Shown here: in pieces, positions 4,628 to 31,800 of the stretch | How positions within the stretch are numbered: position 1 is the stretch's first letter | Layout: each line of letters opens with the position of its first letter | IMG/VR virus record: IMGVR_UViG_3300040801_002079 | Span: 248,001-312,000 of that record | Direction: 5' to 3' (one strand) | DNA: 64,000 bases | The notes under the pieces: model-generated | What the model was told of the DNA's origin: nothing | The model's database searches: none | What the model saw: only the letters and a program-made list of their open reading frames with translations | Translations under genes and position numbers: made by a program

Positions 4628-5110
4628 ATGACTACAACTAAAAAGAAGAAAACTAAGAATTATTTGAATAATAAAGACATGCTGCATCAATGGAAACTAA
4701 GCTATGAAGCTGATGCAATGACAGATGTATTTGCCAACATGATCATGTTGCTTACCAAGAGATACTCATCCAAGGTTAGATTCAATGTTTGTGATACTTT
4801 CCGAGATGATATGGAATCATTTGCCCTGATGACCGTATCTAAAGTATGGAGAAGTTTTAATCCAGAGAAATCCAATAATCCATTCGCATATTTTACCCAA
4901 GTAATTAAGCGGGCATTTTATCAATATCAAAACATGGAACGCAGACAGCGTGATATTTCAAATGAACTATTAATAGAAGATGGTCAGTCCCCTTCCCATG
5001 CATACATGGTCGAATATGAATATCGGAATTTTGACCCGGACGATGCGGGTGGATCAATTAAAACCACGTATGGTGACGGATATTCTGAAGCTGATGAGAC
5101 CGAATCTTAA
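4628..5110 (+). CDS. gp55: Late-transcription sigma factor (T4 gp55-like)
   Basis: NYLNNKDML and FNPEKSNNPFAYFTQ motifs typical of gp55; matching NATAAATA promoters throughout the window. Confidence 0.9.
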   Translation: MTTTKKKKTKNYLNNKDMLHQWKLSYEADAMTDVFANMIMLLTKRYSSKVRFNVCDTFRDDMESFALMTVSKVWRSFNPEKSNNPFAYFTQVIKRAFYQYQNMERRQRDISNELLIEDGQSPSHAYMVEYEYRNFDPDDAGGSIKTTYGDGYSEADETES

Positions 5111-8336: not shown

Positions 8337-9980
8337 CTATTTAATCCATGTAAAGCTTTCCAACCACCATTTAGGTATAACGGTATTCTTTGTCTGGTTA
8401 TACAAGAATGTGAAGCTTTCGTCAAGTATGTATGTTATTCCCCAATCAGTGTGATCACGGCATACACGACCCGATCCCTGAATCATCTCCTTTAATGTCT
8501 GACGATTGTACCAATCCCTAGACATATCCATTCTGCGCTTAATCCATTCATCACCTAACGATGGAAATGGAACTTTGGCAAATATGGCAAACCTTCCCAG
8601 ATCATGCTTCAAGTCAAGCCCTTCGGTAATACTAGGGGATACCAGTACAGTCGGCTCTACTTCTGCACTCTCCATGTATGACTTAATAATGTCATCACGT
8701 TTGACAACCTGATCCTTATATGGGTTATGGTTCAATATCTTATGGCTATCGGTTGTTTGTAATTCTTCAATAATCCACTTTGAAAGTTTAAAGCTTCCGG
8801 TGTGTATAATGCCGGAATCACTCTTATGTTGATCAAGAATGCCCTTAATGGCATTAATCATATTGCGTCTGCCAGCATTTTTTTCGGGATCATCTCTATC
8901 CCATCCATAGCTCATACGGGCTGACGGCATATACATAACAGGTCTGCGATCAGGATCAAACTCTGATTTAAGCGATAGAAACGCCGCTTCATCTGGATTA
9001 ATCCGTAAGTCTCGACAGAATCCATCTTTATTTAAAATAGTGGAACTCATAAACAAAAACTTTTCGGCTTTCGGTTTAATTATCCCATGAAATGCCCTTC
9101 CACCAAATAACTCCTTTACCGTAAAATCTTTATCATTTTTAACCAATACGTAGTTATCCTCAATTTCTTCATTAGTACATAGAAGAACTTGATTGATATT
9201 GTCGGCATGTCGGGTATACCTGATGTAATTCTTAATGATTGCTTGATCATCAGCGGATAGTTTATCACTGGAAGCATAACTTTCAATTCGCTCTATTTCC
9301 CTTGAAAGAGACCCAATATAATGTTCCAGCTTAGGCCAATATGTCTCAGTCATCCATTGATGAGCTTGTGACATTGTTTTCGGTCTATATAGCTTGAGTT
9401 GGTTATTGCTGATTTTAGCGCAAGTTGTTTCAGAAATAGCGAAAGTGCTAAAATTAACCAGTTGCTGTTCGAGATTATGGCATTCGTCCATAACCATTAA
9501 CTTTCTACTAGGCATTCTTTTTTCTTCCAGATATGAAAAATAAAGAAGAGCCAGTGTGTAATTCAAAACCATATTAGGTGATGCATTAGCCCTACCAAAA
9601 GCAGCTTTGTAAGGACATGAACTACATGAGGGTTTAATAGATGAACCTACTTCACATGAGCAATCTTTTGGCTCACAACGATAGTTGCCCTTTCCGTACA
9701 TAGAAGCCAAAAGCTGTTTATCAAAAGAGGTTTCATACTGATTCTGAAGAATCTTTTGAGGTGTTAGAATGAATGAAGAACCCATCCCACTTTTGGATAA
9801 CCATGAACTTACCGTTAAACCAATAGGTGATTTACCACCACCCACAGGCATTTCAAGTAAAATGTATTTCTTTTCAGGAGGTAATTCTTGTATCCAATCA
9901 AACGTTTCTTGTTGGGAGATACGAGGACTGTATTTGGGCATTACCCTGTCCCATGATTTCATTATGTCGTTATCATTCAT
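8337..9980 (-). CDS. DinG/XPD-family SF2 helicase with probable Fe-S cluster
   Basis: Motif I EMPVGGGKS, DECH, EGLD, KVPFP, QGSGRVCR; Cys cluster C-x4-CxC-x9-CxxCPY. Confidence 0.88.
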   Translation of the reverse strand: MNDNDIMKSWDRVMPKYSPRISQQETFDWIQELPPEKKYILLEMPVGGGKSPIGLTVSSWLSKSGMGSSFILTPQKILQNQYETSFDKQLLASMYGKGNYRCEPKDCSCEVGSSIKPSCSSCPYKAAFGRANASPNMVLNYTLALLYFSYLEEKRMPSRKLMVMDECHNLEQQLVNFSTFAISETTCAKISNNQLKLYRPKTMSQAHQWMTETYWPKLEHYIGSLSREIERIESYASSDKLSADDQAIIKNYIRYTRHADNINQVLLCTNEEIEDNYVLVKNDKDFTVKELFGGRAFHGIIKPKAEKFLFMSSTILNKDGFCRDLRINPDEAAFLSLKSEFDPDRRPVMYMPSARMSYGWDRDDPEKNAGRRNMINAIKGILDQHKSDSGIIHTGSFKLSKWIIEELQTTDSHKILNHNPYKDQVVKRDDIIKSYMESAEVEPTVLVSPSITEGLDLKHDLGRFAIFAKVPFPSLGDEWIKRRMDMSRDWYNRQTLKEMIQGSGRVCRDHTDWGITYILDESFTFLYNQTKNTVIPKWWLESFTWIK

Positions 9981-10007
9981 TCATTTTTCCTTATTTCAGG
10001 TCATTTC

Positions 10008-10036
10008 ATTATACCACTTCTTTTCTCAGATAACAA
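10008..10036 (-). promoter_or_regulatory. Sigma70-type promoter for the helicase-gp47-gp46 operon
   Basis: Minus strand TTGTTA-17 bp-TATAAT with extended -10 (TGgTATAAT); AAGGA RBS before ATG 9980. Confidence 0.7.
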
Positions 10037-10592
10037 CCGCTGAAAGCGGGTTGTTGGTTCGAAGAACCGATTTTTCATTTCCATCTTAAAGGGACTCGTA
10101 CCTCGCCCTTTAAGATAATTATATGGGGTTTTATCGATTGAGTTACTTATATGAATTAATTATTTAAGCCCTTAGAGTTAATTATAAGGGGGTTTTACCC
10201 TATCTCCCTCCCCCATTTTTCGTAATTACATAATAATTACAAGAAAATTGATCCCAAAGCCAAACTTAGTGGTTTTAGTTCTATCCACCATCAGAACCGA
10301 AATGCACCTAGATTACAATCAGAACAAATCGACTTACCCCTTCTGGTAAACACAGAGGAATATGTTTTAATAGGTCAGGCTATATGATTCCAGTTTAATT
10401 CCGAAAACTATTGCAATCATGAACCCCTATATGGACCTTAAGTACCTTTTAGTGTATATCGCGTTTACAGATATACGGCCTCTTTCGACGTTCACGGATT
10501 AGCCGTGTCAGTGCAGCCCATTCAGAATTATCAAGTTGTAATGTAATCAGGTTAAAGTAAGTATCGTAGGTATTGTAAGTATCGTAACTATT
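10031..10592. other. Structured non-coding element (candidate replication origin or ncRNA)
   Basis: No credible ORF; about ten inverted repeats (e.g. 10083-10093/10106-10116, 10222-10228/10234-10240, 10454-10460/10470-10476), an AT-rich tract and 4x9-bp repeats. Confidence 0.55.
10557..10592. repeat. Four tandem imperfect 9-bp repeats
   Basis: GTAAGTATC GTAGGTATT GTAAGTATC GTAACTATT. Confidence 0.85.
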
Positions 10593-11339
10593 TTAATTAA
10601 GTAATGCTTCTTCTATTAATTCAAAATTATATTCTTTATCTTTAGCTAGTTTAACTATTATTTCATACATTATTTTTGCATCATTAATATCTTCAATTGG
10701 TTTAGGTATATTACTCATTGCGAATGCTTCTTCACATTCGTTGCGTAACACATTTACATACCAATCATCATGTAGGTTATCATTTTCCAATAATGAAAGC
10801 ATTATCTCATGCTTCTTAAACCTACCCCCTGAAGTTCCAGCACAATTTTTACAAGGAAGTTTTTTACCTTTAGTGTTAAATTGCTCTGGATAAGTAAGCT
10901 CACACGCTTTAACTTTCAGAGTTGATGGTGAAACTACCACACCATGATATTCGATGTCAAGCATTAATTTGGTTCTTAATAGTGTACTGAACGTAACAAG
11001 ATCAATAAGAGGACCAGCAGCGGATGAATAGCTATAACCCTCAATGCAGATTATGGTTTCCTCTGCATCATTATTCAGGTTTAAAGCAATGTCGCTAATG
11101 ATATGGTCAGTTATCTCATTATATAATTTAAGTTTTGCTAGTTCGCTTTGCGAATACGGTAAACTCGTATCAACACCATCAAAGAATTTATAATCAACAT
11201 ATTGATCCATGAGTTTGAACCATTTCTTCAAACTCCCAGTTTTCGTCTTTGCTAAAGCATTCGTAGTGTAAACGTAAAATCGACCATTTATACACACTGC
11301 CGTACATGACAGTGAGGGGTCTATCGTTATTATATTCAT
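10593..11339 (-). CDS. ruvC: RuvC-like Holliday junction resolvase
   Basis: IDPS (first Asp), IEGY (Glu), SPSTLK, K(K)HEIM, DINDA (final Asp). Confidence 0.8.
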   Translation of the reverse strand: MNIITIDPSLSCTAVCINGRFYVYTTNALAKTKTGSLKKWFKLMDQYVDYKFFDGVDTSLPYSQSELAKLKLYNEITDHIISDIALNLNNDAEETIICIEGYSYSSAAGPLIDLVTFSTLLRTKLMLDIEYHGVVVSPSTLKVKACELTYPEQFNTKGKKLPCKNCAGTSGGRFKKHEIMLSLLENDNLHDDWYVNVLRNECEEAFAMSNIPKPIEDINDAKIMYEIIVKLAKDKEYNFELIEEALLN

Positions 11340-11380: not shown

Positions 11381-11758
11381 TCAGTAGTTAACTACTATAA
11401 CATTCAACCCATTATCTTTGGCATACTTAATCATGTGGGCAGTGCCACGAGATTTACCATCCCAGAATGCAATTAATGAATCGGCATAATCACCCATCTG
11501 CTCGTTGCGTATGGGTCCAGCGGCCTTTCCATGTTTATCCCATTCTGCTGGAAACAGCATTACACCAACATGATTTTCTTTAGCCCAGCGTTCACCTAAA
11601 CTATCGGCACCACGAGCACCACCTGATACAATCTCTATTTCATCAGCATGATTGCCATTCCATATAGCATTTCGAAAATTTTCTAATGTTTTTGATAGTT
11701 TCTCGTAGTCATTAAAGTCTCTGCCACCAGCAACTATTACTTTGTGAAAATTAAACAT
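11381..11758 (-). CDS. SLOG-family protein (DUF2493/YspA-like)
   Basis: VIVAGGRDF, SGGARGAD, AAGPIRNEQM, AFWDGKSRGT. Confidence 0.85.
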   Translation of the reverse strand: MFNFHKVIVAGGRDFNDYEKLSKTLENFRNAIWNGNHADEIEIVSGGARGADSLGERWAKENHVGVMLFPAEWDKHGKAAGPIRNEQMGDYADSLIAFWDGKSRGTAHMIKYAKDNGLNVIVVNY

Positions 11759-11998: not shown

Positions 11999-12924
11999 AA
12001 AAAATGAATCGGATTTAACGGAATCTCCGTTTTACTCTCATATGAACACTTTTTACACTTAAACTCATATTCCTTGGATGTTCCCCAATCATTAGCAACT
12101 TGGATATATTCTTGCATCTCGTCAATGACTGGAGCCTCACATGCTAGCGCCCATTCACGAATATGCTCTTTATTTGTAACTCCATTAACCGATTTGATGA
12201 CAGACAACAGTGTGTCAATAATGAAATCAGCCATTTCCTCAGGAGTTTCAATTTTTGTCATATCGTACTGGAACAATGTTAACATTTCTTTAAATGTTGA
12301 AGGACGTAGCTCAATCTCTTCACCAGTGGCTACAGTAAATTTGTAGTCATCCAGATTTGGATCAAACGGCACAGTATCACGTAAGAACTTATTAAGGTTT
12401 ATTTGATAAGTTGGTTTAACATTTACAAGTTCTGTGTATGAAGATTCCTCACCTTCTCTTCTCTGATCAATGCGATGCTCATCGGTTGACGATTCTGGAA
12501 TTATTTCTTTATCATTTCCACACTTGGGGCAATTCCAGTAAATGTCCAACTCTGATCCGTAAGTTACCATTCTTAAGCAGACTAATAGGTAATCTACATC
12601 ATTGGATAACAAATCCATCGGTTTTTTAATTTGAGGCATACACCGCTGAAATACCTTTTCAATAGCTGAACCTTGAAATAGCATATCAGGTGAACGCATT
12701 GTAATCTCATCAACTGTTGTCATGGGATAAACTAATACTTCACCATTAACAACCTCCTCATCCAGTTCACCATTAGTATACGTAACACCTCCAGATGGAA
12801 GTCTAAATGTCTCCGGGGGCATCTTGTTGAAACGTGCCATTAATGGATTGGGTGGAGGAGCGTATGTTCTGGTAGCCTCTTCTGTTTCAGGCTTAACTTC
12901 GTTTACATGTTCGTTCATCATCAA
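11965..12924 (-). CDS. gp26: Baseplate hub assembly protein / tail chaperone (T4 gp26-like)
   Basis: LPSGG, PMTTVDE, DVDYLLVCLRMVTYG, two CxxC pairs, C-terminal FF. Confidence 0.8.
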   Translation of the reverse strand: MMMNEHVNEVKPETEEATRTYAPPPNPLMARFNKMPPETFRLPSGGVTYTNGELDEEVVNGEVLVYPMTTVDEITMRSPDMLFQGSAIEKVFQRCMPQIKKPMDLLSNDVDYLLVCLRMVTYGSELDIYWNCPKCGNDKEIIPESSTDEHRIDQRREGEESSYTELVNVKPTYQINLNKFLRDTVPFDPNLDDYKFTVATGEEIELRPSTFKEMLTLFQYDMTKIETPEEMADFIIDTLLSVIKSVNGVTNKEHIREWALACEAPVIDEMQEYIQVANDWGTSKEYEFKCKKCSYESKTEIPLNPIHFFTVPSTKKTKQ

Positions 12925-12949
12925 CCTCTAATAATTATCGTTGTATTCA

Positions 12950-13003
12950 TATTTATAAGTACAAAAAAATGGTGATTTTACCGTTAAGATATAATCATAA
13001 ATA
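12950..13003. promoter_or_regulatory. Back-to-back late promoters at the main strand switch
   Basis: Minus TATAAATA 12950-12957 (gp26-like) and plus CATAAATA 12996-13003 (baseplate cluster). Confidence 0.75.
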
Positions 13004-13045
13004 CATATACGCAATGATTTATATATTGTCAGGAGATAGATTATC

Positions 13046-21585: not shown

Positions 21586-24500
21586 GTGAATAATTCGGAT
21601 TATAAAAAAAATAGGATAAACATTAATGAATTGCTACCGGACCTTATTTCAAATACTGAAATAAGTAAAAGTATTCAAGAAAATCTGTTTAATCGATTCC
21701 TATCTAAAGATGAATACCAGAGAGTTATAGGTGTTATAGGAACTCCCGACCCAAGAGACCCAACTTCATTTAGAATTCCAGAAAACAATGAATACCGAGA
21801 AAATTATCAGTTGCAGCCCGTTGCTCATGCAAAGGTTGGCTCAGTAGATTACCATTTGTCGTTTCATGATTTGATGAGACGATTGGAGTATTTGGGAGTA
21901 AATACTGAAAGATTTGATGAGTGGGGCAATTCGATGCAATTCAATTGGGTCCCACCAATTGACATTGATAAAATTATAAACTATCAAGATTATTTTTGGG
22001 TATCGGAAAATTTTGATGACGTACCACAATATATAACGGTTAAAAACTTGTGCACTTGGGCGCAAGCTCGTTCTATACAAGCAAAGAAGACTGTTATTTC
22101 TGTACAACAGCCCATTGACATCAACTCAATAAATGAAAATATAATCGAATTATCAGGAAATGTTGTTTCCAAGTATAGTCCGGGAGAACACTTAATAGTT
22201 TACAATAGTAATGAGAGTGAATATGTCGTTGTTACAATTAAAACCGTAGATTTTAATCTATCATCATCTAATACTGATATTATTGTTGACACTAGATTAT
22301 CATCTGATCTCAATACCGCAGCAAGAATCGAATTTCCCATAATTGGAGTTATATCCGCAGAAAAATCAATAATTTTAGAGGGGGATTTGACAAATATTTT
22401 CGCTCCGGAATATATATTCTCTTTAACTAAGTCTATTGGGACGGTAACAACATACCATACGGTTTCAAGCGCATCATATGATACACTGCAAAATCAAACA
22501 ACAGTTGTACTGAAAGAAAACCTTGAAGCCTTAAACTGGAAATATGCTTCAACCTTGCCTCAAATCTTAATGAATGATGAGGAGGCTAGAAGCAGATGTA
22601 ATGAAAATTATACTAGCACCTTGTTTACACAATGGAAAGACGAATACATTGGAAGGCTAATATGGTCACCTAATAAATTAATTATTCAATCTTCTGGATC
22701 GGGACGAACAGAGCTAGGGGAAGATTCTTTTTATGAAGAGAGTTTACTACTTGTAACGTCCGGGGTTAAGAGAGGGGATGTATTAAATATATTAGAAGGT
22801 AAAAGTGAAGGCCAGCATGAAATCATAAGCGTTAATCAAAATCCGGTAACGGGGAGCGTATTGGGGGTTGATCCAAGCGCATTCTTCTTTACAGAATATA
22901 ATGTATCATATCAGATTTATAGGGAACAAACCACGGCTCTAATAACACGATCCGAAGATGATGTACCATCATCTCCAGAAATATATGACCTATGGATAAA
23001 TTCAGATGATGGTAATTTATATCAGTGGACTGGAAGCACATGGAGATTGGTTGCAAACAACATTGATGTACTTGTCGCTTCTTTATATGGCAGACACCTA
23101 CTTGACTTCAATGAAGATGATGCGTGGGCCAAAGAAAATAAATGGATTCACAAAACACAGCTTAGTACATTTGAATCTGCCACACGAGCGCAAATTCCAA
23201 TAATTGAATACGAACCATATATTAAAAAATCAACAACGTCATATTCTAGCAAGGAATGGAAATATAGGGTTGATTCAACTAACGAATACTTTGAAACTGA
23301 TGCGTCACCCAGAATGTTTGAAATTCAGGACATTCGCATAACAGAGAGTGGTAATGAATTTTCATTCATGACGGATACAAAAATATTACTTCATGAAAAA
23401 TTTGGCAACTTGGTTGACGATATTCAAATTGGTGAAAGGATAGAATTTAATGACTTTTCAGAAAACATCAGCACAAAAATTGTTAAAGATGTTGAATTTT
23501 ATAGAGTGTTTCCGAAGTCCAGACACCAAACGGTAATAACATTAACAACCCCCGTAAATGATCCATTTGATCTACCTGTAGGGGCACACATTGGTCCACA
23601 GGAAACATCACTGGGTGATCCTTGGATTGGTATAGATGAAGGGCACTGGCTATTTGAAGGAGTTGTTAATATTCAGGCATCAAGTATTGAGCCTGAGCCA
23701 AACCCAATGCTTAACGAACTATTTGAAAGTAAGTATGTTCCGAAACAAACCGGCGCACGAACGCTTGATATACAATCATTAGATTTTGAAGACATTGAAT
23801 CATTAGAAGTTATAGAAGCACTGGAAACTATAGTACAGGGTGCATACAACTATGAAACAAATATTGGACCTGTATGGCAAACATTTTCTCTCCCGGATAG
23901 TATACAAATAACCGCTCCAAGGTTCGTATTTGACCCCACACTTCATACATTAGCACTATATGAAGATTATCAAGAGGGTGACATGCGTGTATACATAAAT
24001 GGTGTCAGACAGTATGGCAACTTCTTTGATATTAGATCAGAAATATATCCAGATTTTGTTGGTGGCATTCAGTTTGATGATGATACGGTTATTACTAACC
24101 TAGATGTTATACGAATTGAACTGGGCGAATATGCTAAGTATGAAATAGGAAAAAGGGCGGTCACTATTCCAACTGAAGCGGGACTAGAGCCATACAATTT
24201 AGTAGATGTTCGGGCAATGGAGCAAATAAAAACTGATACAAATCAGTACATTTATTTTAACGTTTACGATGTTGACACTCAGCCGAAAATATTTGCTAAT
24301 ACTATATTCAAGTATAATGAATCCGATGAATATTCCGTAAGCCCATATATTCTGGAGCGTGTTGTTGCCGATCCAGCCACCAAAACCTATGAATTTGTTA
24401 ACGAATTGTTCAACCATGAAACAGAAGAACTATATTGTTATTATGACGCAAAGTATGTTGGTAACGAACTTCAAAATCTATGGAAGAGAGGATTAAATAA

Positions 24501-27500
24501 CGAACAGTACGTACCTAAAAAAATAGATAACACTGATTACTGGAAGCTTCCAAATCAGATGTACTATAACCCACAGCATAGAAATAGAAGAGTTGTATCT
24601 TTTCAGGATGTATATAGACATTTTAGAAGTATAGCCCAGTCCCAAACCACTCCCGGAATATATTCAAATGTAACAAACCTATTTCATCTTGATGATAGGG
24701 TCAATTTCGGCTTGGGTGGAACAATAAAAGAACATAATGATAATTTTGATATCTTGATATCAACCATCTTTTTAAACAATGTAAATCCTATAAAACTCTA
24801 TCAGTTTGCGCATGATCAATATCGTTTAAACTTTAAATGGTTGGAAGAAAAATTTATCGATAGTTTTGAAATGCTAGTAAGTGATACTCAGTCCAACACG
24901 ACTGATACACTATCCGCCACTATTTCAGAATATTTAATAGATGCATTTGAAACGAATGATAAACTATCTCAATGGTTTGGGGATAGCTCCACATATAATG
25001 AAGCAACTGATACTGGAATAAAAAACTGGATTGCAACAACTCCATATTTTGGAATGAATTATCTGTACATGCCGTACATGAATATTGATGAAAGATATGG
25101 AATTTATGAATTGTTCCATCATGATGGTCACCGTAGACAAATAGAGTTATCAGCTTCACTGAAGGAGCAATTAAATAAACGTCTATTGGCTCTAGATATA
25201 GCGTCAGAACAAGTAGTTAATAATGATCTTGATCCATTTCCCTTCAGCATAGAGGGTCGTGCTGTAAAACGCGGAGATTATCTGGTTAGGACTGTCCTAC
25301 AGGATAAAACTCGTAAAGTATACAGAAGAAACTACAATAACGTATGGGAAGAATTTCCATATGAAAAGATATTAGCAGAAACATATCTGGATGTCGAGAA
25401 AAGGCTTTATGATAACTGCCCATCATATGATGAGCTTGTTTTCGATTTTTCAACGGTTGAGAATGACGTTGAATATTCTTCCACGCTTGAAAAGCAATTC
25501 GTTAAATACGGCAATTCCAGAGGTATAGATTATCTATACGCCAACGAAATATTTTACACTGGGACTGACCCATTCACTTGGAATTATTATTATACCCCAA
25601 TACCGTCACATCCCGTGACAGGAATAGAAAGTTCAGATGTTGCGGGTAGCTGGCAAGCATTATATGAGAAAGTTTATAATACCCCATACCCACACCTTGA
25701 ACCATGGAAATTGCAAGGATATAGGGATTTGCCGGATTGGTGGCTAAATCGTTATAAGGTAACAGATGGTACCAGAAGATGGTCATCCGAAATGTGGGAT
25801 AATGTTCTAGCTGGAAGAGTTCCCACTGGACGAACCCTTCCTGACGGTGAAATATCGGCTGGCGCAAGAAATGAAGTAAATTCTTATGATTACGTATCTG
25901 TAAATATCGACAATTTTCCAACACATGATGGATACGATTCGGATGAATTGCTTCCACCATATTGGAATTCCAGCAATTCCGAACTAAGTACAGTTAGGTC
26001 ATTATATGATCCAGATGCTAATGATTTCATACAATCACCCGATCTGGACTTTGATTGGGGACAAAATGGAACACAAGAATGGAAATGGAGTGCATCCGCT
26101 CAAAGAATTTATGATGAGTTAATAACAGCATTTAAATTGCAGCCATTAAAATTCACAGCAAGAACATACGGAATAGAAAAGGCTGAGATAAATTGCCTTC
26201 AAATTGATTCCTTAACAAAGTCTCCATACGCCGTTAGAAAAACTCTATTTCATGGAGATATAGACCCAGACACTAATAGTGTGATTACAATTAATGGTGC
26301 TGGGCAATGGTATTCACACTACAACAGAAGCCATAATTTTGATGGCGAATCATCAGAATATAGAACACTATGGAAAGATTGGGATATCCCCCTATCATAT
26401 GAATTTAATGCATTCATTGATACGCCCAGCTTCAGAATAGAAAATGCAAATTTCGACATAACAACCAAAGATTATAGCGTGGAAGTTAAAAAGACTCACG
26501 GTATAGATTTAAAATCAATCTTTGGGCTAAGGGCAAGAATATTATCAGTTCCTTCTAAGTATGCAAAGAACCGCGATTATGGTTTAGGGTGGACCGCAGA
26601 GTTCTTTAACACATCCCCTGATAATAATGATATAAATGTTTATGGAACAGAAAACTATGACTATAGGGTAAAATCGGATAATGAGACCCTGCGCTTATTT
26701 AGTTACCCAATATCTGGAGCAGATGTATCCAGACAAAGAGGTCTACAAGTAGCGAATTATAATCAACAAGCACTATTAAGCGACGAGACACTATATCCAT
26801 CAACCGTAACTCCATTTTTTGCTGACATTTTAATTGATGGAATAAAGCAAATTGAATTGGTTGTGCGTGGCACAGAAGTTAAAACTATATCGGATTTGCT
26901 GGATTCTCTTAATTTACAGCTTGGAACCAACGCTACTGCCACACTTGAACAGGGTAACATTTATATAAGAAGTGATACTACCGGGGCAAGTTCTTCCATT
27001 GAAATAACAGATAGAGGATTGTTTACAACATCACATCAATCATATAGTTCTTTACAGCCGCCAACAACAGAGCCTTTAGAATTTAATCGTGTATTTACAA
27101 TTAAAGGAAACTACACATCGGTATTTCCTGAAAAGAGCGAAGTTGTAATAACAGATTCTACTAATTATAACGGAACATATACCGTGTTTGGAACATTTTA
27201 TGATGTGCCAAATAATGAAACACATATTCACGTAGATGAATTTGTAACAATACCAGATACCACAGTTGATGGATTTATAGAACCTGCCGATGCACTAACT
27301 TTACCGGAAGAGTGGGTGACTGGAACAGAATTATTCTTAAATGGAAACTCCGATGCGCCTCCACCATTAGATAATACACTACCGTATTACATCATTCGAT
27401 TAAGCGATAGAGAATTTAAATTGGCTGAAACTGAAGTTCTAGCATATAAGGGGACAGCAATATCCGGAATCTCCGACAGTTTTATAAACACCATGATAGG

Positions 27501-30500
27501 CAGGCTACAGCGCACATTCCGAGCATTGAGCGGTCAAACGATTGATACGGTATGGCGGAGACACTATCCAGATAAACGAGTTGTCGAGTCTCACCCCAAT
27601 CTAGTCAGTATATCCGGCATACAAAACATGATTGATTTTGTAACGGGATATGAAGATTACTTATATGATCGCGGATTTGTATGTAAAAATCCAGATGGGG
27701 ATAATTATGACCTATCTACTGGAAGAACTAATGATTGGCAGTTTGAATTAGAGAAATTTATATCTAACCTTTATAGGCTAAGAAGTAGAAGACAAGAAGA
27801 GCCATTGGAATATAAAGTATCAGTTAATAGTGTGGACAATAACATAACACTATTGGATGGTGCATACTCAAGTTGGCAGAATGGTACGCGGGTTGTAATT
27901 GTGGAAGGAGATGATGAGGCCCAATTACCCCAACCATTTGATTCAACACTATCGAACGCATTCCCCTATTACATTATACGAAGCGCTCATGATAATATTT
28001 TCCAGTTAGCCTATACCCATTATGATGCAATGAGGGGCAATGCCATTGATATCATAGATGATGGAGTGGGGGATATAAGGCTTAAAGTCTTTAAGAGATT
28101 GACAAATGCTCCAGAATTAGAAATAAACCCACTAAAATCATCAATATGGGTTAAAAATGATCAGGGTGTTATGAATGATGTATTTCATGGCACAAACCTT
28201 GATGTTGTCACATCACAAGCTGTATTTGATAACAATAAAAGGGAAATGAACAGCAATGAAATAATTGTATTCAGACAGGATCATGAAAATAAAATAACAA
28301 TAACAAATGAATTACGCAATTATACAATAGATGCTAAGGTTCCCATCAACAAATATATGGCGGGAATGAATTTATATTATGATGGATATGAGCATATCAT
28401 AACATTTGAAGAATATTCAACCGACGACTCTTTGATATACGATCCATTCTTGGGCGTATCAACACTTAACTTCAGAATCGAATTTAACCGACAGAATGAT
28501 ACTACCTTTAGGCCAAATGTTGGTGGATACACATTACTTGATAATGAATTATTGCAAAATCTAGAGTCCTCTGTAAATGACGTTAGAATGATGTACGACA
28601 CACATAAGACACTGGAAACTAAGCAGTTAACAGAATATGTTCGCAAATCATTAGGATTCGATGAAAAGGATTATATGAATGACATTTCATTAAATCCTAA
28701 AACACAGTTCCTATTTTATAAAGGAATGATTCAGAATAAGGGTACAAATTTTGCCGTAGATGCATTCACAAATCAAACGCTATTTGAAACTGCCGAAATC
28801 GATGAATTCTGGGCGTATAAGCTTGGAGAATTTGGTGGAGCAAGAGAGCTTAGTTATCCTGAAATGATACTAACCCCCGATGATGTTGTTCGCAGAGAAC
28901 TAAGATTGGAGTTCTTATTGCCGGATGAAGGAAGTCTACATTCGTCATTTGTTCCGGTTAGAATAACTGATCCGGAAAGATGGTGGGACCAGCCAGATCA
29001 ACTACAAACAATAAAACCATATGACGGATTCTGGTTCAATATTGATGTTCTTGAGCAAATCGGAAATTCGGAATACAACATAGAATACATTAATGGTAAT
29101 TACATCTTAGATTTGGGTAAGATTGTTAACTCTGTAATTTTGACACATTACAATCCCGAAAGTGAACTCGTTGAACAACTGCAAGAGAATTTACATTTCG
29201 TCTATATGAGTAATAGGGCGATAAAGTTCATAAGAGATGCGGATGATGTTCCCGTTGCAGATTTGCCCCCAGACTCTGCGTTAAAATATCAAGACCTAAC
29301 TGTTAATGTGGTAACATATCACTATGATGCCATAAACCCAGCTAAAGTTATTGACAGAGACTATGACCTTGGTAATTATGATGATACGGGAATTGATGCT
29401 AAGGCCGCAAAAGTTATAACGGAAGTGCCGGTTTGGAATCCAGCCTTTGGACAATATTCACATATTGTAGATTTTGTTACTAATATAAAGAGTAGCGAAG
29501 ACCAAGCAAACTATACCAATTATCCAGACGGCACTTCCCCCGATTTAACACCATGGCTATTTGACATGGTTGGTACCGTATGGATGGACAATAGTATAGA
29601 GCATTATGTTCCATATTATGACAAAACTGCCATGCCTAATTTCGATAAAAGAATCTTCTTATGGGGCACATTGGCTGAATGGGGCGATATAGCACTATAT
29701 GAGTGGTCACAATCACTACTTCCACCAGAAGAATGGGACGGAGACGGTTCCCCTAGAACACTAATCTATAAAAATGATGCAGCAGACCCTGTAAATGATG
29801 ATCCCATTTGGGTTGAAAATCCAGACCCCGATGTGCATGAAGATTATATTGCAGGCTTGGTTACTCCAACCAATAGCACATCCTTAACTGGTGAAATAGA
29901 GGCATATATAAATGGTGAATATGATCAAACCCTAACTATAAACACCCCGGATGATTTTGTAACATATGCTCTAACTTTGCCGCAAGAGGTTCATGTTCAT
30001 TTGATGCATCGGGGGTATGTCCCAACAGAGGATGATCTAAGTGATAATCTATATAAGTATGATACGCCATACTGCAAAGAGACTAGGTATAATTCGGATA
30101 GTAATGAACCATATGATGTATATTATTTCTGGGTAAGAAACCGTGAAACAAAGAGAGAATTTCAGAATGGCAGCGTAACAGTAGTTGAAGCGGAAAAGAT
30201 ATCTAAGAATATGGATTCGCCGTATATGATTATTGAGGGATTGCGTAGCAATGAATTTGGTTATGGAATAATTTACGGCGCAACATTTGATCCATTTGAA
30301 TATGATGTTCCAAATAGATATACTCACGCAATAATAAAAGGACTAAGAGGAACTGTTAAGGGACATTCTCGCTATACGTTAAGGTTCACACGAGACTTTA
30401 ACTTGAGAGATGAGATAGATGATGATCTAAATCTAAAAAATGTCCACGAGGAATGGAAGTTATTTAGAGAAAAGCAGTTTTCCAAGATTGATATCGATTT

Positions 30501-31800
30501 ATGGGAAAAAATAATCGAATCTATGATAAATCATCCTGTATCTAATAAGGTTGTGGATGTGGATACAACAATTCCTACGCTCAATAGAATTCTATATGAT
30601 GACCTTTATCAAAAAGATACAAAATATGGATTAGGAACTGAACAGGTATTAACTGACGGCGAACTTGCCATACAGACGGTCACATCCATTCTGGATGATC
30701 CAGATAGGGAATTTATCGGCATAAACATCGATGAGTTTAGGCAGAATAATGGGTTTACAACGCAAACGGATATTGTAAACTCAATGTATGAAATTTATAA
30801 TTCATTCTCTGTTGTTGATGTCAATTATATATTTTTCCAAGTTTTACTAGATGCATTCAGCCTTAAGAAGGAATTTAAAGACATATTTAAAACCTCTTGG
30901 GTTGCATTGCAAATTACTCAAAATATTACGTCACCTGAGAATATTGAACTTGATATTGTTGAAGTTGAAGAAGGCGGGGATTGTTCGCTACCCATAAGTA
31001 ATATACCAGATGAAGAGATTTCACCACCTCTCCCATCCGCATCAATGACCCCGACTCCAACGGTTACGCCAACCATGACTCCAACGGTTACGCCCACAAC
31101 TACCGTTACCCCAACCGTTACCCCGACAAATACGGTTACACCAACAAATACTGTAACTCCAACTGTTACTGTTACACCAACACTAAGTGCTACAGTTACG
31201 CCTACTGTAACAGTCACTCCGACAAATACTGTAACTCCAACACAAACTGCTACGGTTACGCCAACTCCAACACAAACTGCTGCGGTTACCCCAACAGTGA
31301 CCCCAACAGTGACTCCCACAATAACCCCAACGGTTACACCGACTCAAACTGTTACACCTACGGTAACGGCTACGCAAACTGTTACACCAACCGTTACACC
31401 AACAAATACGGTTACACCAACTCAAACAGTGACTCCGACTCAGACTGTAACTCCAACAAACACGGTTACACCTACGGTTACACCAACACAAACTGTTACC
31501 CCGACAAATACGGTTACACCTACGGTAACGGCTACGCAAACAGTGACTCCGACCCAAACCGTTACACCTACTGTTACACCGACAAATACGGTTACACCAA
31601 CTCAAACCGTTACACCTACTATTACACCGACTCAAACAGTATCCCCAACGGTTACACCAACTCAAACCGTTACACCTACTGTTACACCGACAAATACGGT
31701 TACACCAACTCAAACCGTTACACCTACTGTTACACCGACAAATACGGTTACACCAACTCAAACCGTTACACCTACAATAACACCTACCCAATCTGGATAA
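21586..31800 (+). CDS. Giant virion structural protein (baseplate wedge gp7-like, 3404 aa) with a C-terminal Thr/Pro mucin-like tail
   Basis: Follows gp6; own late promoter; YQLQP, IDIDKIINYQDYFW, PHLEPW, YKGMIQNKGT, IFKTSW motifs of large jumbo-phage wedge proteins. Confidence 0.7.
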   Translation: MNNSDYKKNRININELLPDLISNTEISKSIQENLFNRFLSKDEYQRVIGVIGTPDPRDPTSFRIPENNEYRENYQLQPVAHAKVGSVDYHLSFHDLMRRLEYLGVNTERFDEWGNSMQFNWVPPIDIDKIINYQDYFWVSENFDDVPQYITVKNLCTWAQARSIQAKKTVISVQQPIDINSINENIIELSGNVVSKYSPGEHLIVYNSNESEYVVVTIKTVDFNLSSSNTDIIVDTRLSSDLNTAARIEFPIIGVISAEKSIILEGDLTNIFAPEYIFSLTKSIGTVTTYHTVSSASYDTLQNQTTVVLKENLEALNWKYASTLPQILMNDEEARSRCNENYTSTLFTQWKDEYIGRLIWSPNKLIIQSSGSGRTELGEDSFYEESLLLVTSGVKRGDVLNILEGKSEGQHEIISVNQNPVTGSVLGVDPSAFFFTEYNVSYQIYREQTTALITRSEDDVPSSPEIYDLWINSDDGNLYQWTGSTWRLVANNIDVLVASLYGRHLLDFNEDDAWAKENKWIHKTQLSTFESATRAQIPIIEYEPYIKKSTTSYSSKEWKYRVDSTNEYFETDASPRMFEIQDIRITESGNEFSFMTDTKILLHEKFGNLVDDIQIGERIEFNDFSENISTKIVKDVEFYRVFPKSRHQTVITLTTPVNDPFDLPVGAHIGPQETSLGDPWIGIDEGHWLFEGVVNIQASSIEPEPNPMLNELFESKYVPKQTGARTLDIQSLDFEDIESLEVIEALETIVQGAYNYETNIGPVWQTFSLPDSIQITAPRFVFDPTLHTLALYEDYQEGDMRVYINGVRQYGNFFDIRSEIYPDFVGGIQFDDDTVITNLDVIRIELGEYAKYEIGKRAVTIPTEAGLEPYNLVDVRAMEQIKTDTNQYIYFNVYDVDTQPKIFANTIFKYNESDEYSVSPYILERVVADPATKTYEFVNELFNHETEELYCYYDAKYVGNELQNLWKRGLNNEQYVPKKIDNTDYWKLPNQMYYNPQHRNRRVVSFQDVYRHFRSIAQSQTTPGIYSNVTNLFHLDDRVNFGLGGTIKEHNDNFDILISTIFLNNVNPIKLYQFAHDQYRLNFKWLEEKFIDSFEMLVSDTQSNTTDTLSATISEYLIDAFETNDKLSQWFGDSSTYNEATDTGIKNWIATTPYFGMNYLYMPYMNIDERYGIYELFHHDGHRRQIELSASLKEQLNKRLLALDIASEQVVNNDLDPFPFSIEGRAVKRGDYLVRTVLQDKTRKVYRRNYNNVWEEFPYEKILAETYLDVEKRLYDNCPSYDELVFDFSTVENDVEYSSTLEKQFVKYGNSRGIDYLYANEIFYTGTDPFTWNYYYTPIPSHPVTGIESSDVAGSWQALYEKVYNTPYPHLEPWKLQGYRDLPDWWLNRYKVTDGTRRWSSEMWDNVLAGRVPTGRTLPDGEISAGARNEVNSYDYVSVNIDNFPTHDGYDSDELLPPYWNSSNSELSTVRSLYDPDANDFIQSPDLDFDWGQNGTQEWKWSASAQRIYDELITAFKLQPLKFTARTYGIEKAEINCLQIDSLTKSPYAVRKTLFHGDIDPDTNSVITINGAGQWYSHYNRSHNFDGESSEYRTLWKDWDIPLSYEFNAFIDTPSFRIENANFDITTKDYSVEVKKTHGIDLKSIFGLRARILSVPSKYAKNRDYGLGWTAEFFNTSPDNNDINVYGTENYDYRVKSDNETLRLFSYPISGADVSRQRGLQVANYNQQALLSDETLYPSTVTPFFADILIDGIKQIELVVRGTEVKTISDLLDSLNLQLGTNATATLEQGNIYIRSDTTGASSSIEITDRGLFTTSHQSYSSLQPPTTEPLEFNRVFTIKGNYTSVFPEKSEVVITDSTNYNGTYTVFGTFYDVPNNETHIHVDEFVTIPDTTVDGFIEPADALTLPEEWVTGTELFLNGNSDAPPPLDNTLPYYIIRLSDREFKLAETEVLAYKGTAISGISDSFINTMIGRLQRTFRALSGQTIDTVWRRHYPDKRVVESHPNLVSISGIQNMIDFVTGYEDYLYDRGFVCKNPDGDNYDLSTGRTNDWQFELEKFISNLYRLRSRRQEEPLEYKVSVNSVDNNITLLDGAYSSWQNGTRVVIVEGDDEAQLPQPFDSTLSNAFPYYIIRSAHDNIFQLAYTHYDAMRGNAIDIIDDGVGDIRLKVFKRLTNAPELEINPLKSSIWVKNDQGVMNDVFHGTNLDVVTSQAVFDNNKREMNSNEIIVFRQDHENKITITNELRNYTIDAKVPINKYMAGMNLYYDGYEHIITFEEYSTDDSLIYDPFLGVSTLNFRIEFNRQNDTTFRPNVGGYTLLDNELLQNLESSVNDVRMMYDTHKTLETKQLTEYVRKSLGFDEKDYMNDISLNPKTQFLFYKGMIQNKGTNFAVDAFTNQTLFETAEIDEFWAYKLGEFGGARELSYPEMILTPDDVVRRELRLEFLLPDEGSLHSSFVPVRITDPERWWDQPDQLQTIKPYDGFWFNIDVLEQIGNSEYNIEYINGNYILDLGKIVNSVILTHYNPESELVEQLQENLHFVYMSNRAIKFIRDADDVPVADLPPDSALKYQDLTVNVVTYHYDAINPAKVIDRDYDLGNYDDTGIDAKAAKVITEVPVWNPAFGQYSHIVDFVTNIKSSEDQANYTNYPDGTSPDLTPWLFDMVGTVWMDNSIEHYVPYYDKTAMPNFDKRIFLWGTLAEWGDIALYEWSQSLLPPEEWDGDGSPRTLIYKNDAADPVNDDPIWVENPDPDVHEDYIAGLVTPTNSTSLTGEIEAYINGEYDQTLTINTPDDFVTYALTLPQEVHVHLMHRGYVPTEDDLSDNLYKYDTPYCKETRYNSDSNEPYDVYYFWVRNRETKREFQNGSVTVVEAEKISKNMDSPYMIIEGLRSNEFGYGIIYGATFDPFEYDVPNRYTHAIIKGLRGTVKGHSRYTLRFTRDFNLRDEIDDDLNLKNVHEEWKLFREKQFSKIDIDLWEKIIESMINHPVSNKVVDVDTTIPTLNRILYDDLYQKDTKYGLGTEQVLTDGELAIQTVTSILDDPDREFIGINIDEFRQNNGFTTQTDIVNSMYEIYNSFSVVDVNYIFFQVLLDAFSLKKEFKDIFKTSWVALQITQNITSPENIELDIVEVEEGGDCSLPISNIPDEEISPPLPSASMTPTPTVTPTMTPTVTPTTTVTPTVTPTNTVTPTNTVTPTVTVTPTLSATVTPTVTVTPTNTVTPTQTATVTPTPTQTAAVTPTVTPTVTPTITPTVTPTQTVTPTVTATQTVTPTVTPTNTVTPTQTVTPTQTVTPTNTVTPTVTPTQTVTPTNTVTPTVTATQTVTPTQTVTPTVTPTNTVTPTQTVTPTITPTQTVSPTVTPTQTVTPTVTPTNTVTPTQTVTPTVTPTNTVTPTQTVTPTITPTQSG
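31045..31797 (+). repeat. Coding tandem repeat (VTPT/VTPTQT/VTPTNT)n, about 250 codons
   Basis: Almost only T, P, V, Q, N, A; near-identical 48-bp units at 31573, 31681 and 31729. Confidence 0.97.

What the first reader, a model, noticed from the sequence alone, without database searches (positions are those of the whole stretch)
10031..10510. Dense multi-hairpin non-coding element between ruvC and the DinG-like helicase: origin or unknown ncRNA
Seen: the only long intergenic region (9981-10592) in a densely coding window. Hairpins include AACAACCGCT-GAA-AGCGG(G)TTGTT (10032-10055), GGTTC-GAA-GAACC (10056-10068), an 11-bp stem 10083-10116, 10169-10190, 10222-10240, 10340-10358, 10384-10420, 10454-10476 and 10493-10507, plus an AT-rich tract near 10141-10167. 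Established: C-GAA-G triloops are unusually stable as DNA hairpins. Inference: the top-strand GAA triloops, AT tract, tandem repeats, neighbouring recombination genes and nearby strand switch (~12.98 kb) favour a replication origin; a structured RNA co-transcribed with ruvC that partners RuvC or DinG is a less likely but more novel option.
Basis: partly seen in the sequence, partly recalled or inferred. Interest (0 to 1): 0.65.

Follow-up and report, generated by a model that had tools for sequence, protein, structure and literature searches.

The report
New large structured jumbo-phage RNA
The hairpin-rich gap between a jumbo phage's RuvC-like and DinG-like helicase genes is most likely a gene for an intricately folded non-coding RNA of about 0.5 kb. 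It is kept in about 22 related phages through compensatory base-pair changes, matches no known RNA family, and its job is unknown.

Summary
The hairpins are real. The window is part of a 316.8-kb jumbo phage, and both flanking genes lie on the minus strand. The 612-nt gap has no ORF and no Rfam match.

The same element sits directly upstream of the orthologous helicase, in the same orientation, in 22 distinct phage or metagenome loci.

- **Covariation:** on a 21-sequence alignment of the 5' domain, 45 pairs are 91% paired against 64% when shuffled. 39 pairs show compensatory changes.
- **Strand:** two invariant G-U pairs and 100 G-U cells place the structure on the minus strand, so it is RNA.
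- **Architecture:** three-way junction, T-loop-like hairpin, hairpin array, two H-type pseudoknots, an invariant G run, an A-rich spacer, and a terminal hairpin capped by tandem G-A pairs.
- **Own transcription unit:** several members carry a near-consensus sigma-70 promoter in front, a terminator behind, and a separate helicase promoter.

The origin reading is poorly supported. The genome-wide GC-skew minimum lies 2.2 kb away at the divergent gene switch, with no inflection at the element.

Verdict: a new orphan class of large structured phage RNA. Its function is unknown, and no transcript data exist.

The parts
10593..11339 (-). Upstream gene: RuvC-like Holliday-junction resolvase (248 aa).
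   Evidence: PHROG 159, E = 1.3e-9. No Pfam hit.
10557..10587 (-). Two copies of a 12-nt direct repeat between the RuvC stop codon and the RNA. This may be the promoter or leader region. The 5' end of the RNA is not defined.
   Evidence: Read directly from the sequence. Only weak sigma-70-like matches are found here, 9 of 12 at 10619->10590 and at 10555->10527.
10542..10548 (-). P1 5' strand. It pairs with 10311-10317 and is specific to the WIN/L109/L008/L002 subgroup. It closes the whole 5' half of the RNA.
   Evidence: A 7-nt complementary pair is invariant on both sides in the four closest members.
10364..10524 (-). 5' domain.
- P2 (10515-10521 with 10431-10437) closes a three-way junction with PA (10487-10514) and P3 (10440-10484).
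- PB (10370-10430) stacks directly after P2. It carries a conserved UGA bulge (10375-10377) and an apical hairpin with a T-loop-like loop (10392-10409).
- The domain ends in a conserved UAAAAC box (10364-10369).
   Evidence: Covariance model R1 finds it full-length in 21 loci, E = 4e-42 to 2e-6. On alignment A16, 45 pairs are 91.4% paired against 63.7% in shuffles, and 39 pairs show compensatory change. A MAFFT alignment that was not fitted to the structure shows the same covariation.
10300..10360 (-). Hairpin array: P6 (10337-10360), P7 (10317-10334) and P8 (10300-10309). This part is much longer and more variable in other members.
   Evidence: A stable hairpin with a different sequence forms at the P6 position in almost every member.
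10268..10298 (-). Pseudoknot 1, H-type. Stem 1 is a hairpin, and five loop bases pair with the five bases that follow the hairpin (stem 2).
   Evidence: Stem 2 is 86% paired and all 5 pairs covary. Stem 1 sequences differ between members but stay complementary.
10222..10265 (-). Conserved GUUUGG box (10260-10265), short hairpin P10 with a conserved CAAUUU loop (10241-10255), and variable hairpin P11 (10222-10240).
   Evidence: Alignments A6 and A15. P10 itself is weakly supported, 63% paired.
10204..10220 (-). 3' strand of pseudoknot 2 (AAAAAU, 10215-10220), which pairs with the P10 loop. It runs directly into the invariant G run (10204-10214).
   Evidence: Key pair is A-U in 11 members and G-C in 4, including L109, L014, L020 and L017. 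The G run is the most conserved stretch of the family. No partner for it is supported.
10117..10203 (-). A-rich spacer with no conserved sequence.
   Evidence: Family-wide composition is A 44%, U 30%, C 13%, G 13%, against A 31% in the core.
10083..10116 (-). Terminal hairpin: a long covarying stem capped by a CGAG...CGAG motif (tandem G-A pairs around a 3-4-nt loop). It probably stabilises the 3' end or acts as a terminator.
   Evidence: The same cap sits on different stems in about 15 of 21 members.
10032..10068 (-). Two further hairpins (10056-10068 and 10032-10055). The second is terminator-like on the minus strand.
   Evidence: Terminator scan finds 4 sites against 0.6 expected in shuffles.
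10008..10036 (-). The helicase gene's own promoter: TTGTTA, 17-nt spacer, TG, TATAAT. Its -35 hexamer overlaps the last hairpin.
   Evidence: Best sigma-70 match in the region, 10 of 12 with an extended -10. Equivalent promoters are seen in L034 and in XacN1, Xoo-sp13 and RAS14.
8337..9980 (-). Downstream gene: DinG/XPD-like helicase (547 aa) with four invariant cysteines.
   Evidence: Pfam Helicase_C_2 at 3.5e-18, plus ResIII and DEAD. PHROG 2488 at 5e-100. Invariant cysteines are listed.

Best explanation
The gap holds a gene for a structured non-coding RNA of about 450-520 nt. It is read from the minus strand, in the same direction as the flanking genes, and is the founding member of a previously undescribed RNA family. 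The family is confined to a clade of XacN1-related, T4-like jumbo phages.

Shown:
- The element is conserved at one fixed locus.
- Its helices are maintained by compensatory changes.
- The structure is strand-specific.

Inferred architecture:
- A three-way junction (P2, PA, P3).
- A stacked long hairpin with a T-loop-like tip.
- A variable hairpin array.
- Two H-type pseudoknots.
- An invariant G run that emerges from the second pseudoknot with no supported partner.
- An A-rich spacer.
- A terminal hairpin capped by tandem G-A pairs.

Inferred from promoters and terminators:
- It is transcribed as its own unit by host sigma-70 polymerase, so early in infection.
- It ends at the 3' hairpins.
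- The helicase then has a promoter of its own.

Inferred function:
- The RNA works as a folded molecule in trans, as a protein-binding scaffold or catalytic RNA.
- The exposed G run and the G-A cap would be its contact surfaces.
- It probably serves the replication and recombination module in which it is embedded.

I put about 0.85 on 'conserved structured RNA gene' and only about 0.4 on the trans-acting role.
For: - **Locus and family:** the window is part of a 316.8-kb phage record with terminal repeats. Iterated nhmmer and covariance model R1 find the element in 22 distinct loci. It is always on the helicase strand and directly upstream of the orthologous helicase. This includes two loci found by an RNA motif alone, whose downstream ORFs are 48% and 44% identical to the window's helicase.
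- **Covariation:** alignment A16 is 91.4% paired against 63.7% in shuffles (0 of 500 shuffles as high). 39 of 45 pairs show compensatory change. The covariation score is 0.706, against 0.225 for shuffles and 0.06-0.12 for slid controls. MAFFT alignments not fitted to the structure show the same helices.
- **Strand:** P2 holds an invariant G-U and an invariant U-G pair. There are 100 G-U cells in all. Pairing is 91.4% on this strand against 81.7% on the complement.
- **Pseudoknots:**
- **Single-sequence fold:** the minimum-energy fold of the minus strand reproduces the covariation-derived helices, and the plus strand does not.
- **Own transcription unit:** L034 has a promoter matching 11 of 12 positions, a terminator with a T run, and a separate helicase promoter. 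Promoters matching at least 10 of 12 lie 17-62 nt upstream in 9 of 21 members.
- **No alternative identity:** no ORF. No Rfam family at E up to 10. No tRNA or tmRNA here.
- **Copy number:** single copy in the genome.
Against: - No transcript evidence exists. All eight runs holding this DNA are DNA metagenomes.
- Folding energy of the single sequence is not significantly better than shuffles.
- The A16 alignment was fitted to the structure by the covariance model, which inflates the pairing counts somewhat.
- The 5' end in the window's copy is undefined and its own promoter matches are weak, 9 of 12.
- The family is small, and every member comes from an uncultured phage.
- Complete related phages lack it.
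- Nothing tested bears directly on function.
Confidence: 0.8

Rival explanations
1. Replication origin served by a structured primer RNA. The transcript's G run would form a persistent RNA-DNA hybrid with the template C run. The AT-rich stretch behind it would unwind, as at ColE1 RNA II, mitochondrial CSB II or the T4 oriF/oriG R-loops. The neighbouring DinG-like helicase would load on or resolve the R-loop.
For: - The invariant G run is followed by a 74% A+T stretch of about 90 nt.
- The locus lies inside the recombination and replication module.
- The genome-wide GC-skew minimum is only 2.2 kb away.
- Member-specific short direct repeats occur in 5 members.
- From established knowledge, not tested here: T4 oriF lies beside uvsY and uvsW, UvsW unwinds origin R-loops, and DinG-family helicases unwind R-loops.
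Against: - There is no skew inflection at the element. The minimum coincides with the divergent gene switch, so transcription direction explains it.
- Repeats are absent from the window's copy and from most members.
- The spacer RNA is A-rich and G-poor, which disfavours R-loop extension.
- A conserved, specially capped hairpin lies behind the spacer, and canonical terminators follow. Both argue for a released transcript.
- About ten covarying helices are far more structure than any known origin transcript needs.
Confidence: 0.15
2. A cis-acting leader of the helicase-gp47-gp46 operon. The folded RNA would modify the transcribing polymerase or sense a signal, and so control read-through of the hairpin terminators, as with HK022 put RNA, EAR or riboswitch attenuators.
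For: - The RNA always lies immediately upstream of the helicase and in the same direction.
- One to three hairpins lie between the RNA and the gene.
Against: - A separate promoter for the helicase lies after or over the terminators in the window, in L034 and in XacN1-type phages.
- L034 has a full terminator with a T run.
- The size and complexity far exceed known antiterminator RNAs.
- Gene order in this module is conserved anyway, so adjacency is weak evidence.
Confidence: 0.08
3. Not an RNA gene at all. It would be single-stranded-DNA hairpins (a packaging, nicking or lagging-strand signal), or a decayed remnant of a coding gene, intron or mobile element.
For: - There are many hairpins, some with stable triloops.
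- L002 shows a local duplication of the gene's 3' end.
Against: - A remnant would not maintain 39 compensatory pairs across about 50% sequence divergence.
- No ORF appears under either genetic code tried.
- No group I, group II or other intron model matches.
- The flanking genes are intact and complete.
- The G-U pattern fixes the folded strand as the one that is transcribed with the genes. A single-stranded-DNA role for that same strand cannot be formally excluded.
Confidence: 0.04

Closest known systems
Large 'ornate' orphan RNAs of bacteria and phages (GOLLD, ROOL, OLE, HEARO, raiA)
   Same: - Several hundred nucleotides long.
- Many covarying helices with pseudoknots.
- Phage-borne, as GOLLD and ROOL often are.
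- Recognised by comparative analysis, with no function assigned at discovery.
   Different: - There is no sequence or structure match to any of them (Rfam scans).
- It has a different architecture.
- It is restricted to one clade of jumbo phages and to one fixed locus.
- It carries a G run and a G-A-capped 3' hairpin.
- Whether it oligomerises as GOLLD and ROOL do is unknown.
ColE1 RNA II, mitochondrial CSB II and T4 oriF/oriG origin transcripts
   Same: - A promoter-driven transcript of about 0.5 kb (ColE1).
- A G-rich element followed by AT-rich DNA.
- A position beside recombination and helicase genes (T4 oriF).
   Different: - Much more conserved structure.
- A conserved capped hairpin and terminators after the AT-rich part.
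- No skew inflection at the element.
- No antisense regulator identified.
- Hybrid formation is untested.
tmRNA
   Same: It is rich in H-type pseudoknots, contains a T-loop-like hairpin, and is encoded by tRNA-rich jumbo phages.
   Different: - ARAGORN finds no tmRNA here.
- The phage has a canonical tmRNA elsewhere, at genome 164015-164365.
- There is no acceptor stem with CCA and no conserved tag reading frame.
Processive antiterminator RNAs (HK022 put, EAR)
   Same: It lies downstream of an early-type promoter and upstream of a long operon, with terminators in between.
   Different: - It is five to seven times larger.
- The downstream gene has its own promoter.
- There is no Rfam match.

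Membership tests
Any of the 4227 Rfam 15 families, including group I and II introns, RNase P, tmRNA, 6S, SRP, T-box, GOLLD, ROOL, OLE, HEARO and raiA | A covariance-model match at or near the family's gathering score. | tested here: not met
   - No match at gathering score in the whole window.
- At E up to 10 on 9900-10700, only three chance hits of 14-21 bits against gathering scores of 40-60.
- Nothing in the element of 12 relatives' loci.
tmRNA | A tRNA-like domain plus a tag reading frame, as detected by ARAGORN. | tested here: not met
   ARAGORN finds none in the window. It finds a canonical tmRNA elsewhere in the same genome.
Protein-coding gene missed by the ORF scan | An open frame conserved in relatives, under table 11 or a stop-recoded code. 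| tested here: not met
   The longest ORF is 33 aa under table 11 and 42 aa with TAG read as Q. Indels between relatives are not in multiples of three, and conservation follows helices.
Replication origin | An inflection of cumulative GC skew at the element. | tested here: not met
   The global minimum is at genome 260792, which is window 12792. The curve falls monotonically through 10000-10600.
Replication origin | Iterons or repeated initiator sites conserved across members. | tested here: not met
   Repeats are significant in only 5 of 21 members, with different motifs, and not in the window's copy.
Replication origin | An AT-rich unwinding element. | tested here: met
   The spacer of about 90 nt after the G run is 74% A+T across the family. 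This is weak evidence in a genome that is 61% A+T.
ColE1 RNA II-type primer RNA | A persistent RNA-DNA hybrid nucleated by a G-rich RNA segment, with RNase H processing. | not testable with these tools
   A G run is present. Hybrid formation and cleavage need experiments.
Independent ncRNA gene | Its own promoter and terminator flanking the conserved structure. | tested here: inconclusive
   This is clear in L034, L026, L044, L119 and others. In the window's copy the promoter matches are only 9 of 12 and the terminator is atypical. No transcript data exist.
Structured RNA (generic) | Compensatory base changes that preserve helices, beyond the controls. | tested here: met
   (0 of 500 shuffles reach the observed values, and slid controls are about six-fold lower). 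on alignments not fitted to the structure. for the pseudoknots.

The most novel reading that the evidence does not exclude
The RNA is a new functional class, in one of two forms. It could be a large phage ribozyme or the RNA core of a ribonucleoprotein that acts with the phage's recombination and replication proteins. Or it could be a structured primer RNA whose G run seeds an origin R-loop that the adjacent DinG-like helicase handles. In either form it would be the first RNA-centred machine described for the DNA metabolism of T4-like jumbo phages. Unrelated-looking counterparts that also carry a G run sit at the same locus in the cultivable phages XacN1, Xoo-sp13 and RAS14.
Probability: 0.25. 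Interest if true: 0.85.

Novelty: categorically new. Interest (0 to 1): 0.68.

Why it matters
Only about a dozen classes of bacterial or phage non-coding RNAs longer than 300 nt with complex conserved folds are known. Most of those whose function has been worked out are ribozymes or cores of ribonucleoproteins. A new one is therefore a direct lead to new RNA biochemistry. This one has about twelve helices, two pseudoknots and an invariant exposed G run, and it sits in the replication and recombination module of jumbo phages.

It also shows that the 'empty' gap before the DinG-like helicase in this phage clade, including the cultivable Xanthomonas and Stenotrophomonas phages, is not empty. That gives experimentalists a defined target for transcript mapping, probing, cryo-EM and deletion.

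Tried and rejected
- **Known RNA families:** Rfam at gathering score and at E up to 10 on the window and 12 relatives gave nothing. ARAGORN gave nothing here.
- **Coding:** no ORF under table 11 or with TAG read as Q.
- **DNA similarity to deposited phages:** none for the gap.
- **G-run pairing with the pyrimidine tract after P10:** this helix was predicted by RNAalifold on three sequences. It has no covariation support, 67.1% paired against 67.2% shuffled, and slid controls are equal.
- **Other partners for the G run:** the best duplex partner differs from member to member. No antisense target for it exists in the phage genome.
- **Iterons:** not general.
- **Homology with the XacN1-type and L021-type elements at the same locus:** not detectable with nhmmer or with model R3 with filters off.
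- **Extra copies:** none in the phage's own genome, and none in two complete related phages.
- **Model R2 for the 3' half:** it aligned distant members poorly, so a MAFFT alignment was used for the pseudoknots instead.
- **The ORF between the RuvC-like gene and the RNA in most relatives:** no Pfam or PHROG function, and absent from this phage, so not an obligatory partner.
- **RNA-seq:** no RNA run holds the sequence.
- **Literature:** searches found no description of this RNA.
- **Not needed and not run:** the large protein searches and structure prediction.

Full report
**Setting.** The window is bases 248001-312000 of a 316,801-bp virus record with direct terminal repeats. It comes from a microbial-mat metagenome. 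Gene content is that of a T4-like jumbo myovirus: baseplate hub and wedge genes, a gp55-like late sigma factor, and an SbcCD/gp46-gp47-like pair. The genome also carries 43 tRNAs and a tmRNA.

The finding lies between two minus-strand genes. One is a RuvC-like resolvase at 10593-11339 (PHROG 159). The other is a DinG/XPD-like helicase at 8337-9980 (Pfam Helicase_C_2, PHROG 2488). Anything transcribed with its neighbours is therefore read from the minus strand.

**Observation.**
- The 612-nt gap is the longest non-coding stretch in the window.
- It has no ORF of 34 aa or more.
- It has no long ORF with TAG read through. I tried that code only because the genome carries a tRNA with anticodon CUA.
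- Folding energy alone is unremarkable. For the whole gap, z = -1.97 on the minus strand and -1.02 on the plus strand. For the 5' domain, z = -1.22 and -0.19.
- Rfam gives nothing, either at gathering score or at E up to 10. ARAGORN gives nothing.

**Relatives.** A first relative (L002, helicase 60% identical) had the same gene order and a gap of about 800 nt. That gap aligned to the window's minus strand in blocks, and the differences between the two were visibly compensatory.

I then widened the search in three ways:
- A helicase profile search of viral contigs returned 45 loci.
- An RNA-motif scan returned 58 stretches.
- A helicase profile search of metagenome contigs returned 54 loci.

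Iterated nhmmer and a covariance model then identified the element in 22 distinct loci. In every case it lies on the helicase strand, directly upstream of the helicase. The two loci found by the RNA motif alone (L091, L106) also have the orthologous helicase next to the element. The element is single-copy in the window's genome.

**Structure.** RNAalifold on MAFFT alignments that knew nothing of the structure already showed helices with many double changes and no broken pairs. For helix PB the pair counts were GC 10 / AU 4 / UA 2, UA 11 / CG 5, and GC 10 / AU 6.

I wrote a structure for the 5' domain and built model R1 from the four closest sequences. I then realigned 21 members to it. On that alignment:
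- 45 pairs are 91.4% paired, against 63.7% in shuffles (0 of 500 as high).
- 39 pairs show changes on both sides.
- The covariation score is 0.706, against 0.225 for shuffles and 0.06-0.12 when partners are slid by 1-3 columns.

One caveat applies. The alignment was fitted to the structure, which favours it. The unfitted alignments agree, however.

P2 is the key helix. It pairs the conserved GGCU box with the conserved GGUC box. It varies at three positions in a compensatory way, including C-G to U-A in the L026 group. It also contains a G-U and a U-G pair that are invariant in all 21 sequences.

In all there are 100 G-U cells. Read on the opposite strand, pairing drops to 81.7%. The folded strand is therefore the minus strand, as expected for an RNA transcribed with the flanking genes.

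Downstream of the 5' domain come these elements:
- **Hairpins P6-P8.** Their sequences differ in every member but still fold.
- **Pseudoknot 1.** It is H-type, its second stem is 86% paired, and all five pairs covary.
- **A GUUUGG box.**
- **Pseudoknot 2.** A small hairpin's loop pairs with the AAAAAU that precedes the G run. The diagnostic pair is A-U in 11 members and G-C in 4.
- **The G run.** It is the most conserved part of the family and has no supported partner.
- **An A-rich spacer with no conserved sequence**.
- **A long terminal hairpin.** Its stem covaries and its tip carries a CGAG...CGAG tandem G-A motif in about 15 of 21 members.

**Transcription unit.** In L034 a promoter matching 11 of 12 consensus positions lies 20 nt before the 5' domain. 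A terminator with a T run follows the RNA, and a second promoter serves the helicase. Nine of 21 members have a promoter matching at least 10 of 12, located 17-62 nt upstream.

In the window the helicase promoter is clear: TTGTTA, 17-nt spacer, TG, TATAAT, at 10036-10008. The RNA's own promoter is weak or not of the sigma-70 type. The subgroup-specific helix P1 (10542-10548 with 10311-10317) implies a start upstream of 10548. In this phage the RNA could therefore also be cut from the RuvC transcript.

**Origin hypothesis.** Cumulative G-C for the whole genome has its minimum at genome 260792, which is window 12792. The A-T minimum is at window 12954. Both lie in the divergent intergenic region, and the curve runs straight through 10000-10600. 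Short repeats in the spacer are significant in 5 of 21 members, with different motifs, and not in the window.

The G run followed by AT-rich DNA and the DinG-like neighbour keep an R-loop primer model alive as a minority reading. Three observations fit a released, folded RNA better: the strand-specific covariation, the capped hairpin behind the spacer, and the terminators.

**Comparison with known RNAs.** It is not tmRNA, because the phage has one elsewhere. It is not RNase P, an intron, a T-box or any ornate RNA in Rfam. Searches of the literature found no description of it. The nearest kind is the set of large orphan RNAs such as GOLLD and ROOL, but there is no homology to them.

Related phages without this RNA keep a long non-coding gap at the same place:
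- XacN1, Xoo-sp13 and RAS14 share a conserved element of about 560 nt with 25 compensatory pairs. Its G6 run pairs with an upstream C6 run.
- L021 and L112 share a third type, which also ends in a G run.
- Neither type is detectably homologous to the window's RNA.

**Verdict.** The origin reading is poorly supported. The structured-RNA reading is strongly supported at the level of comparative evidence. No transcript has been observed and the function is unknown.

Noticed in passing
L004:2240-2800 (-), L005:2300-2850 (-), L006:2420-3010 (+): The cultivable relatives XacN1, Xoo-sp13 and RAS14 have a different conserved element of about 560 nt at the same locus. It lies upstream of the helicase, after an extra ORF. 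It shows 25 compensatory pairs among the three sequences, and a 13-bp long-range helix pairs its G6 run with an upstream C6 run. Homology to the window's RNA is not detectable.
   Followed up: partly
L021:2919-3470 and L112:2200-2830: A third type of conserved non-coding element lies before the helicase. It also ends in a G7 run followed by AU-rich sequence.
   Followed up: no
Family members L010, L020, L014, L017, L012, L009, L019, L026, L034 and L106, between P7 and P8: A CAGCC-type box is complementary to the GGCUG of the P2 5' strand and changes together with it in the L026 group. It cannot form at the same time as P2, so alternative conformers are possible. The window's subgroup has helix P1 at that position instead.
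   Followed up: partly
Spacer after the G run in L008, L011, L106, L119 and L110: Member-specific short direct repeats of 6-8 nt, in 3-5 copies, are significant against shuffles. They are absent from the window's copy.
   Followed up: yes
window 12792-12954 (genome 260792-260954): The genome-wide minima of cumulative G-C and A-T skew fall at the divergent intergenic region 12925-13045. The maxima are near genome 168-170 kb. Gene orientation follows the skew.
   Followed up: partly
genome 140922-140999 and 164015-164365 (outside the window): The phage encodes 43 tRNAs, including one with anticodon CUA (an amber-suppressor type). It also encodes a tmRNA with the tag ANDSIYDQALAA.
   Followed up: no
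window 21586-31800 (+): A single open reading frame of 3404 aa.
   Followed up: no
window 4628-5110 (+): A gp55-like late sigma factor gene sits alone on the plus strand inside the minus-strand helicase-gp47-gp46 gene block.
   Followed up: no
window 11381-11758 (-): A YspA/SLOG-domain gene (Pfam YAcAr, E = 4.5e-19) lies between the baseplate-hub gene and the RuvC-like gene.
   Followed up: no
L002:682-800: The 3' end of the RuvC-like gene is duplicated in non-coding form just upstream of the RNA.
   Followed up: no
L011:1422-2735, L019:1730-2830, L004:2863-3918 (-) and others: An ORF of 330-470 aa with no Pfam or PHROG function lies between the RuvC-like gene and the RNA in most relatives. 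It is absent from the window's phage.
   Followed up: partly
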